A DNA stretch of 13,011 nucleotides from Vitrella brassicaformis CCMP3155. Its lineage: Eukaryota > Protista > Chromerida. Position 1 is the first letter of the stretch; every line of letters begins with the position of its first letter. Positions 1 to 12,465 of this stretch are shown here, one piece after another. The notes beneath the pieces are model-generated. The model did no database searches, was not told where the DNA came from, and worked only from the letters and a program-made list of their open reading frames with translations. The position numbers were made by a program, and so were the translations under genes. The stretch covers positions 1 to 13,011 of the forward strand of contig CDMY01000884.1 of assembly GCA_001179505.1 (NCBI GenBank), read 5' to 3'.

Positions 1-137
1 TCCCTTTTGGCGGTAACGAGGCGTGAGATCTCATCCGTGAGAGTCGTCTTGGCGCTTCTCAGCCGCTCGAACGACGCATCGAAGGCGTCACCGACACTCT
101 CGCACCCGGTGATCAGCTCGAGCACCGGATCCTCCAT
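1..137 (-). CDS. 5' coding end (partial, exits window) of a BTB/TLDc-family gene, inverted paralog of the gene at 5222-7253
   Basis: Minus strand GCC-ATG-G at 137 reads MEDPVLELITGCESVGDAFDASFERLRSAKTTLTDEISRLVTAKR, nearly identical to MEEDPVLRLLTGCESVGDAFDASFERLRSAKTTLTDEISRF at 5222. An upstream GT-AG intron at 243..160 matches the intron at 5119..5199. There is an in-frame TGA upstream of that intron and no in-frame ATG, so the intron is treated as 5'UTR. Confidence 0.75.
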   Translation of the reverse strand, partial: MEDPVLELITGCESVGDAFDASFERLRSAKTTLTDEISRLVTAKR

Positions 138-332
138 GGCTGCAGTGTCCTGAGGCTGCCTGAAGCACAACGTGACACAGATTCCCCATGGTTTTGCGCA
201 TCTGAAGGTGCGACGTGAGAGAAGAAGATGCCTGCTGCCTTACCAATCACTGCCCTTCTCCTTCTGGGAGAGGGGCTTCCTTCTGCCGATTGCGAGCTTC
301 GACAGCGACAATTCATCCAAGTCTCCGCCCCC
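1..332 (-). repeat. Inverted segmental duplicate of 5048-5359
   Basis: Reverse complement of 1-332 aligns to 5048-5359 across UTR, intron and first coding exon; 21-107 vs 5255-5341 is an 87-nt perfect match. Confidence 0.95.
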
Positions 333-2152: not shown

Positions 2153-3253
2153 TCATCTGCGTCTGCCTTTTGTCTCTTTTCGCCGCTTGTGTGGCCGTGC
2201 CCTGACGTCCTCATAAGCCATCTCCTTGACTGTCTGCCAGAAGGCCTCCTGGCCGGGCCTCGAGCAGGGCGACTCGATGGCCGGGTCTCGCATGTCGGCG
2301 AAGTTGCTGTCGTCGAGGCAGTACTCCTTCTCCCTCGTGATTCTGTTTCCTTCCATGGCGTCAGCTGCTGCAGTAAGTGCAGCCACCCATCCATCCGTCC
2401 ATTGCACAGACACATGCCTTTGCGGTCTCTCTGTACCTGTGGTGGTGACTTACGGACGCCATACCTTGTGTCATTGCAAAGCAGGAGAGGCTGGCGTCGT
2501 TTTCGACTAGGTGGGCGATTTGCGACGCGGCCGTGTATCCGCCGTTGACGTACGTCTCCGACTTGCTCATCGACGTGCACAAGTCCACCAGCCGGCTGCA
2601 TCCATTGCACACACAAACTCTCTCTCTGCGCGCGCGCGCGCGCGTGTGTGTGTGACATGCCTGCGCGCCTCTACAGAGTCATCTGGTCTGACGCCGCCCG
2701 TGACTGATACGACCGTGGCGCATGGGCACCTCTTGGTCCATCTCTCTGGTGCCTCCGCGTCCATCAAGAGATACGAAAAATCTGCGCAGATGCACAGCCA
2801 CAACCATCTGTGGGTGAGGGTCGCGTATGTGTGCGTATGTGTGTTTGGCCAACCGACCGATGAGGGCCATGTCGCTCGCTTTGGGGGGGAAATTCATGTA
2901 CACGAACTGCGCCCATGCAACGCACACAGCGCACTGGTGGTCTGTGTCTCTGTGTCTCTGTCTGTCTGTCTGTCTGCCTGCGTGTGGTATGCATACACAG
3001 AGGGATACGCTCACACACGTCATATGTGGTCTTCCAGGAGACGGTGGTGCTTTCGTTGGTCTTGGTCAATGGCGTAATGGCCATGTTTTTCAAATTGCCG
3101 GACTGCAGCACACACATTACACACATTACCGAGAGCACACGCGGCGGACACGTTCGTGCAAGCTCGTGTGTGTGTGTGTGTGTGCTTTCTCTCGTTCACT
3201 GCGGCGCGTGGCGTTTGGCCGGTTGGCGGCACACACACACACACACACGCACA

Positions 3254-3289
<36 letters not shown>

Positions 3290-4038
3290 AAGAAGGAGAG
3301 AGAAGGAGAGAAAGATGAAGCTGGATGTGTGTGCGTGTGTCTCCCTCTCTGTGTGTGTATGCCTTTCCCCACTCACCGTGCATATCGCAGTGGTGCACGC
3401 CGACTTTCTGCATCTGGATGGCCACTTCTGCCATGCCCATCATCAGCAGAGACCCAATAGGAATGGTCTCGCCCTTATCCACGCAAAACAGCACACACGC
3501 CCGCCTCCAAATGGCGCGTTTATGGATGGATGGATGGATGGATGGATGCCTCACCGTCGGCAGTTTTTGTATCTTCTCGAGGCCCTTGTTGATTGTCCTC
3601 GCCAGGGGGAGGATTTCAATGATCAGATAATCTGGTATACACCGGGCGCACGGGCACCAATACACAACAGACGCGTGAATGCATGGTTGCGTGTGTGCAT
3701 TGACCTTTCATGGCCTCCTCCTTGCGAGAGACTGCGTCATGCACCACATAATAGGACGGGATCTGCACAGACACAGACAGACAGACAGACAAACAGACCG
3801 ACACGCACAGAGGCGAGACACACAGTCGGTCTTGCTGTGATTGCCATGATGAAGTACGCACCCTTGGGAAATCGCCGGCCAGGTACGCGACTCGCAGCAT
3901 CTTGAGCGACTCCGAGTACTCAGGATTGCGTTCCGCCTCCGCGCCAATGGGCTCCTCCCGCTCGTCAGTTATCGCCGTCCACAGCTTTTCATACACTGAC
4001 GACATGACGACACACACACAAGACGACCAACACCAAGG

Positions 4039-5015: not shown

Positions 5016-5221
5016 GGACACCTGCATGCATGCGCCGGGTGGGCTGTGGGGGCGGAGACTTGGATGAATTGTCGCAATCAAAGCTCGCAAACGCCAAGAA
5101 GGAGAAGGGCAGTGATTGGTAAGGCAGCAGGCATCTTCCATCACATCGCACCTTCAGATGCGCAAAACCATGAAGAATCTGCGTCACGTTGTGTTTCAGG
5201 CAGCCGCAGGACACGGCAGCC

Positions 5222-7253
5222 ATGGAGGAGGATCCGGTGCTCAGGCTGCTCACGGGGTGCGAGAGTGTCGGTGACGCCTTCGATGCGTCGTTCGAGCGGC
5301 TGAGAAGCGCCAAGACGACTCTCACGGATGAGATCTCACGCTTCGTTGCTGCAAAGGGAAGCTCTGCAGGAGACCTCTGCCAGTGGGGAGATGCTGATCA
5401 ATGCAGGCAAGGCAGAAAACACACCAGAGAGGCGCTGGCACTACTAACTGTGTGACCGGTTTGGTTTGCTGTGTGTGTGTCTGTGCAATCGACAGGTGGA
5501 GTGTTGTTCCCTGTATCTCGTAGCGCTCTCCAGCTCATCAAGCGGCGGTACATTGCGGTCCTGCTGCTCTGCTTCCCCGATGCACTCCCGAGAGACGAAG
5601 GCGGGCAATTTTATCTGGAGGTGTCACCGGCATACTTCGAGGCCTTTCTGGACGGGCTTACTCTCTACGAGACTAACCGCACCGACACTGTCCAGCTGCC
5701 GGCATCCAAGGCATCCGACCCAGCTTACAACGAGTATCACGCCCTCTTCATGCGCACGCTCTCGCCGTTTCAAGCTCTGCCACAGAAGGGCAGCGGTGCC
5801 GTCACGCCGAATCTCGATGGCACGGCATGCGATGGGAAGGACAAGGCCATTGCGGATGTCGTCGAGGAGTCGCTGGGTGAGCTGGAGAGGCTCATGAAGA
5901 GGCTCACAAGGGGCAGGGAGGAGCTCTCGGGATTCTTCTCGGCCATGCAGCCATTCATGAAGGGCCAGGACGATGGTGACGTGGAGGTGCTGAGCCTGGA
6001 AGTGCTCGGCAAGAAGGTGAGCATGCTGAAGCGGACATTGCAGCGACTTGGCAGTGACCACCCTCTGCTCACGCGATTCTCAAAGTGGGCGGGCACAGCA
6101 GAAACAGAGAGGTCGACACACAGAGGGTCATGTGAGCTGTTCTGTTATGTGTTTGTGTGGTGTTCAGTACTCCGCCCTGTTGGGGTGACCGTCGAGTGCG
6201 TCAGACGCCCACCCGACACTTTGTCAACACAGTCGACTTCGCTCGTCGGATCGGCGGCACCATGCCAGCGGGGCAATTTGTGCGGCCCCCAGCGATGGAG
6301 GAGAGCGAGTGTGGGCTGTTCAAAGAGGATCTCATGATGGTAAGTCTGAGTGCTATTGTGGCTTGCCGGTCGGTCACATCTGGTCTGTGTCGATATTGTC
6401 TGTGTCAGTACGGCCTCTCCTACTCGTATTCGCCGCCCGTTGATCTGCCGGCGGGCAACGAGTGGATCATCAAGTCGGCAGACGAGTGGGTGGCCGTCCT
6501 GAACATGATCCACACATCCATCTGCAAGCCGTCGCTCGTCTTCAAGTGAGCAGCCATCCCTTTGACTCATTTGACCTTCTCTATGCGCCGTGTGCTGTGT
6601 ATGGCAGGTCTAGCAGCGACGGCTTCAAGTACAAGGCGTTCCTTGACAAGGTGGCGGGCAAGAGCGGCCTGCCCTTCGCCATCAAGCATCACACCCGCCG
6701 ATTTGGCTGCTTCGTTGACGGGCCACTGACACCGCCACAAGACCCCACTAAGACGAGCGGCATATGCCGCGTTCCCATCTTCTTCTTTTCGCTGCCCACC
6801 ATAGGCCCACCGCTGTCTGGCGCCTATGAGCGTACGACTAAGATCGAGCTACCCTCAGAGAGTCAGGTGGTGGAGGTGGCCGGCACAAGTGGGGTGGTGA
6901 AGAGCGACAAGGGCGAGCCGCGTGGGAATGTGGCCATCGCTCGCGGTGGCGCTGGAGGAGTCTTGTGGCTGGGCTACGGTGATCTAGGTCCTGCGGCCGA
7001 CCTCAGCCGCTGCCAACAGTGGATGGCGAAGAAACACTTGCCGGCGGGGTATACCGGGGGGTACACTGGGGAGGACCACGGCATATTGGCGGAGTACCTG
7101 AACTTCACCTGCAGTGAGCTGGAGGTGTGGCATGTTGAGACCGGCAGCAGGGGCTGCCGATCCAAAGCGGCAGCAGCGCACCCTGCAGTTGGGGGTCGGC
7201 CGAGGAAGCGCTGGAGCTTCATGAGCTGTCTGCCTCTTCGGGGCGGGAAATAG
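5222..7253 (+). pseudogene. Coiled coil - BTB(KCTD/T1-like) - BTB - TLDc gene (576 aa if repaired) with a 2-nt deletion at about 5353; pseudogene, N-truncated protein from ATG 5391, or sequence error
   Basis: Exons 5222-5406, 5496-6084, 6168-6339, 6409-6545, 6608-7253 (first coding intron GC-AG, the others GT-AG). BTB-like: INAGGVLFPVSRSAL...LPRDEGGQFYLEVSPAYF and LEVLGKKVSMLKRTL. TLDc-like: SLVFKSSSDGF...FLDKVAGKSG...RFGCFVDG...FFFSL...FTCSELEVWHV. Exon 1 fits the phase of exon 2 only if 2 nt are added, and the paralog at 1-137 has them (GCCAAAAGGGA vs GCAAAGGGA). Confidence 0.7.
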
Positions 7254-8010: not shown

Positions 8011-8686
8011 ATGGAGCAGCGAGAGAGCGACAAGGGTCAGCCTTTCCGCCCTCTGCAAAGCGAGGCAGCCCAGCCACCTCACCCATCGCCCGACGCGTCT
8101 GCGGGAGAGCCGAAACCGCCGCCCCCATCACCGGCAGCAGGGCCACCACCAGGCCCGGCCGCCGTCTCACTCTCTGTCGCTGCCGCTTCGCAGCCGTCAC
8201 GGGAGCCGCGCGAAGAGGAGGAGGAGGAGCCCCTGATTGACAAAGACGTCCTCTTCCCGTCCGATTCAACCACACTCACTCGGCCGCTCTTTTACGTGGT
8301 GGGGGGCATCTGTCTCATCACCATCATCGAGGGCTTCGACAACGCCGTGATCGGGGACGCAATCGTGTCGATGCAGCAGAGCTTCGGGTTCCAGGACGAC
8401 TCGGCCGTCACACAGCGGGTTGTGGCCCTCCCTCAGATAGTGGCGTGTGTGGCTGCCTTTGCCGGCGGCCAGCTGATGGACTGGCTGGGCAGGAGAGGGA
8501 CAGTGGTGGTGGCGAGCATGGCCTACCTGCAGGGCTGCCTCATTGTGTGCGTGGCGTGGGATTTGTGGAGCCTGATGGTCGGCAGGGCCTTTGCTGGGGC
8601 TGGGATGGGGCTGGTGAGTGGGGAAAGGCATACACACACAGAGAGGGAGACACACGCACACACATCCAGCTTCATCTTTCTCTCCT

Positions 8687-8720
<34 letters not shown>

Positions 8721-10066
8721 TGTATGTATGTATGAAGGCCATTCTGGTGTGCCCCGTGTATGCGGCTGAAGTGGCTCCTGCGGCCATCAGGGGAGCAATC
8801 ATATCTCTGTCAGAGGTGAGCAAAGACACACCCGCCCGACAAGAGACGCATGAGTCTCTGTTGGCATCTCGTATGGGTGTGTGTGTCACAGGTGACGCTG
8901 AATGTGGGCCTGTTCGTCGGCTTCCTGACCAGCAATGCAGTGGCGCACAGCAACCTCCCACGCACACAGGACTGGCGAGTGGTGTTCGCATTCGGCGGAT
9001 TCCTCGCTCTTATCGCTCTCATTCTCTGCCCCTATCTGCCCGAGTCACCCAGGTGGCCCATGACCCGAGACAAGAAAGCCGACGCCATGAGCCCCATCCA
9101 AGCCTTCTGCTCGCCTGGCGAGGCCAGAATGGCCATGGCGACGCTTGAGGAGGAGATAGCCGTGGAGAGGGGGAGAAACGGTCACGATCGGTCGCCATTA
9201 CGGGTGAAGGACTATGTGCAGGTGCTGTGTCCGCGGCGGGAGTACCGGAGTGCGGTTTTGGTGGCGCTGGGCCTGGGGATACTTGAGCAGCTGGTGGCTG
9301 CTGACGTCATGGTCAACTACAGCGAGCTGCTGCTCGGAGAGCTGGGACTTGACCGCGCCATGATTCTCACGGGCACCGAAAGGAGAGAGAGAGAGAGAGA
9401 GAGAGAGGGATAATGAAGGGCCCTGCATTCTCTATCTGCGTGTGTTGGTTTCTGCAGACGGTCATGGCTGCAGGCAAAGTGGTGGCCGTCTGCATCGCAA
9501 TGGCCCTGTGCGACATCATCGGCCGCCGACCCCTACTGCTCTTCTCCCTCTTCATGATGACCGTCAGCTACGGTCACCTCGGCGTCACGCCCTACTTCCT
9601 CACACTCAAGGAGTATCGATCGGAAAAACGCGCCATGCCATTCAGATACTTCGCCCTGGTGGCCTTCATCCTTCTGTGCTCGGCATTCTCTCTCGGCATG
9701 GGGCCGATGGAAAACGTCGTGGGCGCCGAGGTCCTGCCCCTGAAGCTGCGGGCGAAGGGCAACGCCGTGCTGACGCTGCTGAACCGGGTGACGGTGGCTC
9801 TCCTGACTTTCTACTTCCTCTCTCTGAAGGAGGCCATCGGCTTCTCAACCACCATGTACATCTTTGCCGGTGTGTGCCTGGCTGGCGTGTTGTGGGTGCA
9901 CCTGTTCGTGCCGGAGACGGCCAACTATCTGCTGGAGGAGGGGCAGTACCTGGCGCGGCGGCAGAGCACCCAGACGTTCAGGCAGCTGTCCCGCTCGCTG
10001 ACAGGCCTCTCTCGTACACTGACGATTCTCTCGGGTGCTGGTGGTGGTGGTGCATCGCCGCGATAG
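8011..10066 (+). CDS. MFS sugar porter (Sugar_tr family; polyol/inositol/hexose-transporter-like), about 591 aa
   Basis: Exons 8011-8613, 8738-8815, 8892-about 9377, 9458-10066. Signature motifs: DWLGRR, GRAFAGAGMGL|AILVCPVYAAEVAPAAIRG, PESPRW, DIIGRRPLLL, EVLPLKLRAKG, VPETAN; many hydrophobic helices. The donor of intron 3 is non-canonical (see findings). The start ATG is chosen, not proven. Confidence 0.92.
8614..8737 (+). mobile_element. Putative introner-like element, copy B (entire first intron of the sugar porter)
   Basis: Phase-0 GT...AAG intron whose removal restores the conserved GxGLAxxVxPVYxxE motif. Its first 81 nt are identical to minus-strand 3376..3296. Imperfect internal inverted repeat: CATACACACACAGAGAG (8629-8645) vs CTCTCTGTATGTATG (8716-8730). 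Confidence 0.5.
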
Positions 10067-10284
10067 GAGAGATAGATGATTGATTGGTGCATAGGCCATG
10101 TGCATGTGACATTTGCATCAGTTTGACCTCAAGGGCGATGGATAGTATCTTCGGACGTCGTCCTTCGCAGACGCGCGCAAAGCTCGCACAAAAAATGTGT
10201 ATTCCTACGCGTATTCCTGCAACGATGAATGGTTCGCGCGACTCATCTGTGGTTCTCCCTCCCCATCTCGCATCACCGGCAACC

Positions 10285-11971
10285 ATGCGAGGCATCGATG
10301 CAGCCAAGCGGATGGTGGCTGAGCTGGAGAAACAGGCAGGCATCGTCAACGAGCTGAGGACGAACAATGGCGGGCAACTGACAGTCACTGGGCCGCTCGA
10401 TGGGGAGATTGAGGTCAATGTGGGTGGGACGGTGCTGTGTGTGCCTCGCAAGCCGCTGCTGCTGCCCGGCGTGTGTGAGAGCGTCATTGCCTACCTGCTG
10501 CTGTACCATCTGGATGGGCTGCCGAAGGACACAGAGGGCCGCCCATTCCTCGACGCCGATCCAGTCTACCTGGAGTGGTGAGCCAAGCAACACGCACACA
10601 CAGAGGGAGGGTACATATGGTTCTTATTCTTGTGTGTTCTTCCGTGTCAATCAGGTTGCGTGATGAGATTACCAACGTCGGTGTGGCTGATGCGCAGGGC
10701 GAGAGCCACGAGATCGTCCTGAACCCTCCACACGACACCGACGTGTCGTCGCTCTTCTGGCACGAGCTCTTCTTCTCCACCAAGACCGGCCTCGGCACCC
10801 TAGTCACCAAGGACGCCGACGAGTCCGAAGCAGCAGCGACCAGCAAGAACCCCATCGACATCATCAAGGCGAGCGCGTCAGACGTCGAGGCGGCCATGAC
10901 CGACCTGGTCGAAGCTGAGAAAGAGCTCAAGAGATTCCACAGGGCCATCGGGCCATTCTTCAAGTCGCCAGATGGAGATGACGAGATAAGGAGTGTGCGC
11001 GTCCTGGGCAAGACGGTGTCGACCACTGAGGCCACACTGGCGCATGCCGGCCGCGACAAACGACTCTACGCGACGTTCCACAGGTGGGTCACACAACACC
11101 AGACAGATGGGAGAGGCACAATCGTCATGTCTGTGTCCTTCTCTTGTGTCTGCAGTGGTGCGAGTGTGTCTTGTATCCGCCCCGACCACTTCACGAATGT
11201 GGTCGACTTCGCTCGCCGACAGCATTGTGTATCGCCCGGCAGCATCGTCAAGCCACCGACCGCCCAGAATCAGCAGCAGCTGGCCGTCGACTGTGGCATG
11301 TACGGCCTCAGCATGGAGACTGCTAACAGCCCGGTGCTGTGGGCGGATGAGCTGCAATGGATCATCGAAGCGACGGGCAAGCACAACGTCACCACTACAC
11401 GCCTCTTCAAGTGAGCTTTGGCACAGCCGGGTGCGTCTGGACGGCAGTCTGTCTTTGTGTTCATGTGGATCAGGTCCAGTCGTGACGGATTTGGGTATGG
11501 CCCCTTCCTCAACAAGGTGGTGGGCAAGAGCGGCCTACTCTTCGCCCTCCGCGATGGCGACTCACACAGATTCGGGTGCTTCGTCGACGGCCCTCTCACC
11601 CCGCCAGATGACCCCTTACAGACCAACCTCTACGACGTGACCGTCTTCTTCTTTTCGCTGTCGGGTGCGTACGAGACGCCGACCAAGATCGAGATATCCG
11701 AGGAGAGGCAGTCGGTGGAGGTGGCCGGCACACAGGGGGTGGTGAAGACCGACAAGGGCGAGCCGCGTGCGAATATGAGCATCGCTTGCGGCTATCTGTG
11801 GCTCGGATTCGCTCAGCCTGGTCCGGCGGCCGACCTCAGCAGCTGCCACCAGTGGATCAAGAAAGACCTGTTGCCGAACGGCTACAGCTGCTCGATCGAC
11901 AGCAAGGGCAGCGGCACATTGGCGCAGTCCATGAACTTCACGTGCAATGAGATGGAGATATGGCAGGTGGG
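10285..11971 (+). CDS. Second BTB-BTB-TLDc family protein (at least 491 aa, 3' end lost in assembly gap)
   Basis: Exons 10285-10577, 10655-11083, 11156-11410, 11474->11971; three GT-AG introns with compatible phases. Motifs: EVNVGGTVLCVPRKPL...LPKDTEGRPFLDADPVYLEW, VRVLGKTVSTTEATL, RLFKSSRDGF...FGCFVDG...FFFSLSGAYETPTKI...FTCNEMEIWQV. Clearly paralogous to 5222-7253. The start could also be an upstream in-frame ATG (10138 onward). Confidence 0.88.
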
Positions 11972-12271
11972 NNNNNNNNNNNNNNNNNNNNNNNNNNNNN
12001 NNNNNNNNNNNNNNNNNNNNNNNNNNNNNNNNNNNNNNNNNNNNNNNNNNNNNNNNNNNNNNNNNNNNNNNNNNNNNNNNNNNNNNNNNNNNNNNNNNNN
12101 NNNNNNNNNNNNNNNNNNNNNNNNNNNNNNNNNNNNNNNNNNNNNNNNNNNNNNNNNNNNNNNNNNNNNNNNNNNNNNNNNNNNNNNNNNNNNNNNNNNN
12201 NNNNNNNNNNNNNNNNNNNNNNNNNNNNNNNNNNNNNNNNNNNNNNNNNNNNNNNNNNNNNNNNNNNNNNN
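11972..12271. other. Assembly gap (300 N), followed by a 27-G run at 12272-12298
   Basis: Direct reading. Confidence 1.
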
Positions 12272-12465
12272 GGGGGGGGGGGGGGGGGGGGGGGGGGGTA
12301 AGGCAAGGCACATATGGCTGGCTGGCTGTCGATAGCACTGCTGCATGTGTTCTGCGTGCAGGTGGGGAGCGGCTGAACCGATCTGGCAGCACACATAGAA
12401 AGCGGCAGAGACTGGTGACACAACACTGCAGCACACATCATCACACACAGGAGGCAAGCCGACGC

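What the first reader, a model, noticed from the sequence alone, without database searches (positions are those of the whole stretch)
8614..8737. Same intron sequence in two unrelated genes: candidate introner (mobile intron) family
Seen: the first 81 nt of the sugar-porter intron (8614-8694, +) are identical to the first 81 nt of a kinase intron (3376-3296, -), and identity diverges only inside a (CT)n tract. The shared block begins exactly at the GT donor; the flanking exons share only the last G. It is not just microsatellite, since it contains unique text such as GGGGAAAGGCATAC and CATCCAGCTTCATCTTT. Both copies have internal inverted complementarity between a 5' CA/GA block and a 3' CT/GT block. 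Established: near-identical introns at unrelated loci are the hallmark of introners (Micromonas, Aureococcus, Dothideomycete ILEs, dinoflagellates), often derived from non-autonomous TIR elements. Inference: an active or recent intron-generating element; I am not aware of one described in chromerids. No clear target-site duplication was seen.
Basis: partly seen in the sequence, partly recalled or inferred. Interest (0 to 1): 0.82.

Follow-up and report, generated by a model that had tools for sequence, protein, structure and literature searches.

The report
Neighbour's intron copied into an intron
In the alga Vitrella brassicaformis, almost a whole intron of a sugar-transporter gene also sits, flipped, 5.2 kb away at the start of an old intron in an unrelated kinase-like gene; this is a one-off local copy, not a family of mobile introns, and the copy probably has to be cut out in two nested splicing steps.

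Summary
Window 8613-8694 (+) equals 3377-3296 (-) exactly over 82 nt, and CT/GT-repeat similarity (33/40) continues to 8734.

The introner reading is not supported.
- The 72.7-Mb genome (Vitrella brassicaformis CCMP3155) holds only these two copies.
- One doubtful third intron shares a 22-nt head.
- There are no terminal inverted repeats, no target-site duplication and no intergenic copies.
- The "inverted complementarity" of the sugar-porter intron is compositional (z -0.31).

Both copies look like additions. The sugar-porter intron (8614-8737) lies where seven Vitrella paralogues have uninterrupted coding sequence. The kinase-like gene's paralogue has a plain 80-nt phase-0 intron at the same codon boundary, whereas here 275 nt (3377-3103) intervene.

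An MMETSP transcript ORF reads ...HHCDMH|SGNL..., which needs exactly those 275 nt removed. No single GT-AG splice can do that. The genome annotation instead skips the catalytic loop.

The only canonical route is nested: inner intron 3376-3199 (178 nt), which rebuilds the donor G+TGAAC, then an outer 97-nt intron. This is a [D1,2] "stwintron" layout, so far found in the literature search here only for fungi.

Best reading: a single local inverted DNA copy, direction unsettled. Nested splicing is inferred, not shown.

The parts
8614..8737 (+). Sugar-porter intron 1 (124 nt, GT..AG, phase 0), at a position where no Vitrella paralogue has an intron
   Evidence: Pfam Sugar_tr profile runs 6-121 then 120-145 across it. 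The annotated protein P0004 maps exactly with this intron. Seven paralogues have uninterrupted coding sequence at this point.
8613..8694 (+). Exactly shared 82-nt block, sugar-porter copy (last exon G plus intron bases 1-81)
8695..8734 (+). CT/GT(AT)-repeat continuation, 33/40 identical to 3295-3256 (-)
3296..3377 (-). Exactly shared 82-nt block, kinase-like-gene copy
3103..3377 (-). Composite 275-nt intervening sequence (GG..AG) that is absent from the MMETSP transcript ORF
   Evidence: P0002 cannot be mapped with GT/GC-AG introns only. With free boundaries the gap is cac|GGTGAGTG...CTGCAG|tcc.
3199..3376 (-). Proposed inner intron (178 nt, GTGAGT..GCAG) holding the shared block, a (GT)10GC(GT)9 run and a 32-nt tail that is unique in the genome
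   Evidence: It is the only AG|T site that allows a [D1,2] decomposition. The tail is unique genome-wide. Strong (CA)n:(UG)n hairpin, z = -3.69.
3103..3198 (-). Rest of the proposed outer intron. With G3377 it forms a 97-nt GTGAAC..CAG intron at the codon boundary that is also split in the paralogue
   Evidence: It has its own AC-rich to GT-rich polarity cycle.
3378..3473 (-). Kinase-like gene exon ending in ...VGVHHCDMH (catalytic-loop-like HxDxHxGN motif once joined to the next exon)
3019..3102 (-). Next exon of the kinase-like gene, starting SGNLKN...
8011..8613 (+). Sugar-porter exon 1
8738..8815 (+). Sugar-porter exon 2

Best explanation
A single, local, DNA-level copying event duplicated about 120-145 nt, in inverted orientation, between two neighbouring genes on opposite strands 5.2 kb apart. 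The most likely mechanism is template switching or templated filler synthesis during break repair or replication. The copied piece is nearly the whole sugar-porter intron, from its donor through its CT/GT-repeat tail. I mildly favour the direction sugar porter to kinase-like gene (about 55:45). In that direction one event explains both the identity and the abnormal kinase-side structure, including the extra G. Because the genes face opposite ways, the flipped copy is in sense orientation in its new host. It brought a strong GTGAGT donor that landed exactly at the 5' splice site of an old, paralogue-conserved phase-0 intron. The result is a 275-nt composite that no single GT-AG splice can remove in frame. 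The in-frame mRNA seen in a transcriptome can be made only in two steps. First the 178-nt inner intron (3376-3199) is spliced out, which joins G3377 to T3198 and rebuilds a donor GTGAAC. Then the 97-nt outer intron is spliced out. This is a [D1,2] spliceosomal twin intron. Shown: the duplicate, its uniqueness in the genome, the absence of this DNA in paralogues, the in-frame transcript junction, and the uniqueness of the nested route. Inferred: the mechanism of copying, its direction, its date (later gene conversion could keep the 82 nt identical), and that two-step splicing really occurs in the sequenced strain (about 0.5). It is not a mobile intron family.
For: An exact 82-nt inverted duplicate is present. 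There are only two copies in 72.7 Mb by BLAST and by three pattern searches with mismatches and controls, and none in metagenome contigs. The host proteins are unrelated. The sugar-porter intron is real and is absent at that position in 7 of 7 paralogues. The kinase-like paralogue on C242 has a simple 80-nt phase-0 intron exactly after HHCDMH. The MMETSP transcript ORF P0002 reads HHCDMH|SGNL, is encoded exactly by the window's exons, and cannot be mapped with canonical introns; the gap is 3377..3103. Only one [D1,2] decomposition exists, and the 275 nt show two AC-to-GT polarity cycles. The genome annotation had to use an upstream donor and so dropped VGVHHCDMH. The assembly used velvet with k = 75, so both exon/repeat junctions need spanning reads. 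The [D1,2] definition, and the fact that one-step missplicing leaves one G, match PMC12403724. Leads only, not checked here: earlier scan notes report other local, mostly inverted small copies that seeded introns in this genome.
Against: No RNA reads or splicing intermediate could be examined. The transcript may come from another isolate or allele that lacks the insertion, in which case the assembled allele could simply be a frameshifted null. The inner intron's 3' tail is GC/AC-rich, not the TG run usual at Vitrella intron ends. An equally good parse makes the ancestral donor GTGCCG at 3232, so that the AG|T site used by the inner intron would be a lucky pre-existing feature. The regenerated donor GTGAAC lacks G at +5. 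The direction of copying is not settled, since both sites look derived relative to paralogues. The sharp drop from 82/82 to 33/40 identity could mean an older duplicate with later gene conversion, not a fresh event. A third intron with a 22-nt head match (1 mismatch) hints at more history than one event.
Confidence: 0.6

Rival explanations
1. The copy event is real, but the assembled kinase-like allele is a broken (frameshifted) or strain-specific insertion allele. The in-frame transcript comes from an isolate or allele without the insertion, so no nested splicing occurs.
For: The 82/82 identity suggests a recent, possibly strain-private event. The transcript is from MMETSP, and its strain's relation to the genome strain could not be established. 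A paralogue exists that might buffer loss of the gene.
Against: All 221 residues of the transcript ORF are encoded exactly by the window. A canonical nested route exists and is unique. No second haplotype contig is present in the assembly.
Confidence: 0.22
2. It is a low-copy or decayed introner: a mobile, intron-generating element that inserted independently in the sugar porter, in the kinase-like gene and perhaps in a third gene on C272.
For: The copies start exactly at GT donors, in sense orientation, in unrelated genes. Both sites lack this DNA in paralogues. The C272 intron starts with the same 22-mer with 1 mismatch, where about 0.01 such hits are expected by chance (my estimate from the controls; sequence).
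Against: There are two full copies only. There are no extra hits above reversed-pattern controls at up to 3 mismatches, none in intergenic DNA and none in metagenomes. There is no TIR and no TSD. The 3' ends differ entirely. The two copies are adjacent (5.2 kb) and not dispersed. The count is below the four-intron threshold, and the sequence would be at risk in the low-complexity filter of PMC9860276. The C272 match beyond 22 nt is only CA repeat.
Confidence: 0.08
3. It is an assembly, gap-filling or polishing artefact: either the kinase-side block was filled in from the sugar-porter locus, or only the extra G at 3377 is an error, which would make a plain 274-nt intron.
For: The scaffold is small (13 kb) and contains a 300-N gap. 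The pipeline included GapFiller, IMAGE and ICORN. The microsatellite-rich sequence is hard to assemble. The anomaly (the extra G) sits exactly at the repeat boundary.
Against: Velvet at k = 75 and the gap closers need reads that overlap the exon/repeat junction; a 1-7-nt overlap cannot create the join. Both genes are otherwise colinear with their proteins. There are no N runs near either copy. The two copies differ at 7 of 40 positions right after the block, which is unlike an in-silico paste.
Confidence: 0.07
4. It is chance or convergent microsatellite similarity between two typical Vitrella introns.
For: Vitrella introns are generally CA-rich at the 5' end and TG-rich at the 3' end according to earlier scan notes. 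The 3' 40 nt are CT/GT repeats.
Against: The 82-nt exact match includes about 60 nt of non-repeat text that is unique in the genome.
Confidence: 0.01

Closest known systems
[D1,2] spliceosomal twin introns (stwintrons) of Ascomycota (Flipphi, Fekete and colleagues; PMC12403724, PMC8469720, PMC5639578)
   Same: An inner GT..AG intron sits between G1 and T2 of the donor of an outer intron. Removing the inner intron rebuilds the outer donor. One-step use of the distal sites leaves one G and shifts the frame. It can arise when a functional intron integrates into the donor of an existing canonical intron at an old position. Integration is seamless, without a TSD.
   Different: This is an alveolate alga, not a fungus. 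It is a single case, not a sister family. The inner intron's 5' two-thirds are a copy of the neighbouring gene's ordinary intron. No near-terminal 10-nt inverted repeats were identified. Two-step excision is inferred from an mRNA junction, not shown by a splicing intermediate.
Introners / introner-like elements (Micromonas, Aureococcus, fungi, dinoflagellates; survey PMC9860276; Amoebophrya PMC7789003)
   Same: Near-identical intron sequence in unrelated genes, starting at the donor, at positions that lack an intron in relatives.
   Different: Copy number is 2 (perhaps 3) against at least four and usually tens to thousands. The copies are neighbours, not dispersed. There is no TIR or TSD and there are no non-genic copies. 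The similarity covers only part of one of the two intervening sequences.
Intron gain by double-strand-break repair with templated filler DNA, or by local segmental duplication (for example the Daphnia intron gains of Li et al. 2009, cited from memory)
   Same: A one-off insertion of locally templated DNA that is tolerated because it can be spliced. It leaves little or no repeat signature.
   Different: Here the filler is itself an intron with its donor. It landed on an existing splice site, not in an exon (if the direction was sugar porter to kinase-like gene).
Recursive splicing at zero-length exons (ratchet points) in Drosophila and vertebrate long introns (from memory)
   Same: Stepwise removal of one intervening sequence, in which the first ligation regenerates a 5' splice site.
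   Different: Ratchet points are AG|GT inside very long introns and proceed 5' to 3'. Here the regenerated donor uses a G left upstream of the inner intron, and the whole unit is only 275 nt.

Membership tests
Introner family (operational definition of Gozashti et al. 2022, PMC9860276) | At least four sequence-similar introns in one genome | tested here: not met
   Two copies plus one doubtful 22-nt head match. The threshold was read.
Introner family (operational definition of Gozashti et al. 2022, PMC9860276) | [quoted passage not shown] | tested here: not met
   It starts at the donor in both. It covers 121 of 124 nt of the sugar-porter intron but only about 122 of 275 nt (or of 178 nt) on the kinase side, and the 3' ends are unrelated.
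Introner family (operational definition of Gozashti et al. 2022, PMC9860276) | Host genes are not paralogous | tested here: met
   BLASTP E = 7. One host is an MFS sugar porter; the other has no Pfam family.
Introner family (operational definition of Gozashti et al. 2022, PMC9860276) | Not explained by low-complexity or microsatellite sequence | tested here: inconclusive
   The first 60 nt or so are unique text. The remaining half is CT/GT repeat and might fail a manual low-complexity filter.
DNA-transposon-type introner (Huff et al. model) | Terminal inverted repeats and a target-site duplication that supplies one splice site; copies also occur outside genes | tested here: not met
   The ends are not inverted repeats. 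Only a 1-nt G ambiguity flanks each copy. There are no other genomic copies.
[D1,2] stwintron | An inner canonical GT..AG intron lies between G1 and T2 of the outer intron's donor | tested here: met
   G3377 | GT(3376)...AG(3199) | T3198-GAAC.
[D1,2] stwintron | The mature mRNA lacks the whole composite, and no single canonical splice can produce it | tested here: met
   The MMETSP ORF P0002 needs removal of 3377..3103 (GG..AG) and has no GT/GC-AG mapping. Caveat: the strain of the transcript is not verified.
[D1,2] stwintron | A splicing intermediate (inner intron removed, outer retained) is detectable | not testable with these tools
   No RNA reads or transcript nucleotide sequences were available.
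[D1,2] stwintron | The outer intron occupies a position that relatives hold as a canonical intron (formation from an existing intron) | tested here: met
   The C242 paralogue has an 80-nt phase-0 intron after HHCDMH.
Sugar porter (Pfam PF00083) as host gene 1 | Match to the Sugar_tr profile above the gathering score | tested here: met
   Exons match profile positions 6-121, 120-145, 140-293 and 295-449.
   No Pfam hit at E <= 1. An HHCDMHSGN motif forms across the junction. ESM Atlas neighbours are ABC1, APH, Kdo and Pkinase-like clusters at low TM-scores (0.26-0.34 by the query), which are leads only.

The most novel reading that the evidence does not exclude
Vitrella has a recurrent DNA-level process that copies intron-sized pieces into nearby genes, usually flipped, and so creates new spliceosomal introns. 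This locus caught one such event with zero substitutions in the 82-nt block. It produced a functional [D1,2] nested intron, which would be the first stwintron supported by a transcript outside fungi. That would make intron birth and two-step splicing directly testable in a culturable relative of apicomplexans.
Probability: 0.35. Interest if true: 0.65.

Novelty: new member of a known kind. Interest (0 to 1): 0.45.

Why it matters
How new spliceosomal introns arise is still debated. The candidates are mobile introners, reverse splicing, and repair-templated copies.

This locus argues against an introner burst in this chromerid. It does give a clean, datable example of a local inverted copy that adds intronic DNA.

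If the nested splicing holds, stwintron-type architecture is not a fungal peculiarity and can arise in one step from a neighbour's intron.

There is also a practical point. Canonical-only gene predictors mis-annotate such loci. Here the annotated protein lost its catalytic loop, so nested introns may be under-counted in protist genomes.

Tried and rejected
- **Word-indexed protein search.** I searched with the kinase-like exon 3 region inside a stop-free frame and found no hits. The exhaustive search with exon 7 then found the MMETSP ORF and, through its cluster, the annotated protein.
- **C666 hit.** The 3-mismatch hit of the middle 22-mer on C666 lies in non-intronic text and is chance.
- **Tail of the inner intron.** The 32-nt tail (3230-3199) has no other copy at up to 3 mismatches, so its origin is unknown, unless it is the head of the ancestral intron.
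- **Metagenome scan.** A scan for the 22-mer head found nothing.
- **C272 gene.** The gene holding the possible third copy has no paralogue, so the age of that intron position could not be judged.
- **TIR or hairpin reading.** The sugar-porter intron folds no better than shuffles. The kinase-side hairpin is just (CA)n:(UG)n.
- **Reverse splicing of the intact present-day intron.** Rejected as the simple mechanism, because the two copies have unrelated 3' ends.
- **Strain relation of the MMETSP transcriptome to CCMP3155.** The papers searched say nothing on this.
- **Spliced models.** I built or searched no joined spliced model of my own. Exons were searched by reference, and junctions were read from database proteins P0002-P0004.
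- I then worked from coordinates only.

Full report
**Source.** The window is the whole of contig C884 of G000. G000 has 72,700,666 bases in 1064 scaffolds. That is exactly the size and scaffold count of the Vitrella brassicaformis CCMP3155 assembly of Woo et al. 2015 (PMC4501334). The annotated proteins found later also carry that organism's name.

**Observation.**
- Reading both places, a self-BLAST and an ungapped comparison agree. Window 8613-8694 (+) equals 3377-3296 (-) over 82 nt: one exon G plus the first 81 intron bases.
- Identity then falls to 33/40 within CT and GT/GTAT repeats up to 8734. After that the sequences are unrelated. The change in mismatch density is significant (p = 0.0003).
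- Upstream exon bases match 8 of 14 including the shared G (7 of 13 without it). I treat this as chance; the 10 bases before them match 0 of 10.

**Copy number.**
- BLAST of the 125-nt unit against the genome returns the two copies. Otherwise it returns only CT-repeat or CA/GA-repeat hits to the low-complexity half.
- Three pattern searches give exact hits only at the two loci: the 22-mer head, the 22-mer middle and a 17-mer core, each with 2-3 mismatches allowed. Mismatched hits are no more frequent than the reversed-pattern controls.
- There is one exception. An intron on C272 begins with the same 22-mer with one mismatch. From the controls I estimate about 0.01 such hits by chance. The rest of that 70-nt intron aligns only through CA repeats, and its gene has no paralogue to date the position.
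- A metagenome scan found nothing.
- The published operational definition of an introner family keeps families of at least four introns and filters low-complexity similarity (PMC9860276). This case does not qualify.

**Host genes.**
- The plus-strand gene is an MFS sugar porter. Pfam Sugar_tr matches profile positions 6-121 in the exon ending at 8613 and 120-145 in the exon starting at 8738. The annotated protein P0004 maps exactly with a 124-nt GT..AG intron at 8614-8737.
- The minus-strand gene (annotated CEM36244.1, P0003) has no Pfam family. It carries an HHCDMHSGN motif, and its ESM Atlas neighbours are kinase-fold families. So 'kinase-like' is a lead, not a membership.
- The two proteins are unrelated.

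**Are the intron positions old?**
- Seven Vitrella sugar-porter paralogues (29-38% identity) all read straight through the position, for example ...GVGVGV-ATVAVPMYISEV... None has an intron within about 58 codons upstream or about 23 codons downstream. The sugar-porter intron is therefore specific to this gene.
- The only paralogue of the kinase-like gene is on C242, with 47% identity over the exon. It has a plain 80-nt phase-0 intron exactly after HHCDMH, followed by DGNVLF. So an intron at that codon boundary is ancestral.

**The anomaly on the kinase side.**
- In the window the exon ends CAC-G, then GTGAGT follows. The next exon starts TCC directly after the AG at 3104-3103. A single splice from 3376 to 3103 therefore leaves one extra G and shifts the frame.
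- The genome annotation avoids this by using a donor 27 nt upstream (aaa|GTCGGC, a 302-nt intron). That deletes VGVHHCDMH from the protein.
- An independent transcript-derived ORF reads ...QMQKVGVHHCDMHSGNLKN... (MMETSP Transcript_35651, P0002). All 221 of its residues are encoded exactly by the window.
- That ORF cannot be mapped with GT/GC-AG introns. With free boundaries the first gap is 275 nt, cac|GGTGAGTG...CTGCAG|tcc, at 3377..3103.
- Enumerating AG|T sites shows one and only one way to remove those 275 nt with canonical splices. The inner intron is 3376-3199 (178 nt). Its removal joins G3377 to T3198 and creates the donor GTGAACGA of a 97-nt outer intron that ends at 3103.
- The 275 nt also show two successive AC-rich to GT-rich cycles, that is, two introns' worth of the usual Vitrella polarity (polarity notes).
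- This is the [D1,2] stwintron layout defined in fungi, including the property that one-step missplicing leaves a single G (PMC12403724).

**How the pieces fit.**
- Both copies are extra DNA relative to paralogues. They lie 5.2 kb apart in inverted orientation, each in sense orientation in its host. They share a 5' boundary at the donor but have unrelated 3' ends.
- That pattern does not fit reverse splicing of the intact present-day intron. With two copies and no TIR or TSD, it does not fit a transposon either.
- It fits a single DNA-level local copy by template switching or templated repair. Survivorship explains why the copy is in sense orientation and carries a donor.
- There are two parses of the kinase side:
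  - (i) The ancestral intron is GTGAAC..CAG (97 nt), and a 178-nt GT..AG unit was inserted between its G1 and T2. The last 32 nt of that unit are unique in the genome.
  - (ii) The ancestral intron is GTGCCG..CAG (130 nt, from 3232), and the insertion is G plus the sugar-porter copy plus an expanded (GT)n. Every base is then accounted for, and the extra G is the sugar porter's last exon base.
- Parse (ii), and the fact that one event then explains everything, make me mildly favour the direction sugar porter to kinase-like gene. The reverse direction is not excluded.
- An older duplicate later homogenised over 82 nt by gene conversion is also not excluded.

**Structure claim.** The sugar-porter intron folds no better than dinucleotide shuffles (z = -0.31). 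The kinase-side inner unit folds strongly (z = -3.69), but only through (CA)n:(UG)n pairing. Earlier scan notes describe this CA/UG polarity as genome-wide in Vitrella. It is not a TIR.

**Artefact check.**
- The assembly used velvet at k = 75, followed by GapFiller, IMAGE, ICORN and REAPR. An 82-nt exact repeat collapses into one graph node whose two entry edges need real reads across each exon/repeat junction.
- No N runs lie near either copy; the only gap is 11972-12271.
- The copies differ right after the block.
- I rate a paste artefact or a spurious extra G at under 10%. Only reads or PCR can settle it.

**What remains open.**
- Does the sequenced strain really perform the two-step splicing? 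The relation of the MMETSP strain to CCMP3155 could not be established.
- What was the direction of the event, and how old is it?
- Is the C272 intron a relative?

**Earlier notes of this scan.** These are unchecked leads. They report other local, mostly inverted small copies in this same genome that seeded introns or promoters (s1-201647, s1-218485, s1-080137). If they hold, this locus is one instance of a recurrent local process and not of a mobile family.

**Method note.** I built or searched no joined spliced model of my own. Exons were searched by reference, and junctions were read from database proteins.

**Verdict.** The introner family is not supported. The best reading is a one-off local inverted intron copy that turned an old intron into a probable nested (stwintron-like) intron.

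Noticed in passing
window 3378-3404 (-) / protein CEM36244.1 (P0003): The public annotation of the kinase-like gene uses a donor at 3404 and so omits VGVHHCDMH, the catalytic-loop-like motif that the MMETSP transcript ORF retains. This is probably a side effect of canonical-only intron models at a nested intron.
   Followed up: yes
window 8892-10066 (+) / protein P0004: The annotated sugar porter stops at 400 aa by reading into the intron after about 9390. The ORF at 9413-10063 carries Sugar_tr profile positions 295-449, so the real gene probably continues to about 10066 and the public model is truncated or split.
   Followed up: partly
window 1-332 versus 5048-5359: An inverted duplicate, 91-94% identical, of the region between the kinase-like gene and the downstream TLDc gene (its start and presumably the shared promoter). 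A third, inverted gene start therefore runs off the left end of the contig.
   Followed up: no
window 6605-7043 versus 11471-11876 (and 5189-7253 versus 10084-12335): Two tandem paralogous genes with a TLDc domain (Pfam PF07534; 75-81% DNA identity in blocks) flank the sugar porter. The locus has a history of local duplication.
   Followed up: partly
G000:C272:67873-67942 (L029 1501-1570): A 70-nt intron in an unrelated single-copy gene starts with the same 22-mer head (GTGAGTGGGGAAAG-A-CATACAC, 1 mismatch), followed by CA repeats. It may be an old relative of the shared block or a coincidence.
   Followed up: partly
window 3231-3270 (-): A long, nearly pure (GT)10GC(GT)9 run lies inside the kinase-side unit, where the sugar-porter copy has (GTAT)3. 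It pairs with the 5' (CA)n into a strong hairpin (z = -3.69) that brings the ends of the inner intron together.
   Followed up: partly
window 11972-12271: A 300-N scaffold gap lies inside the second TLDc gene.
   Followed up: no
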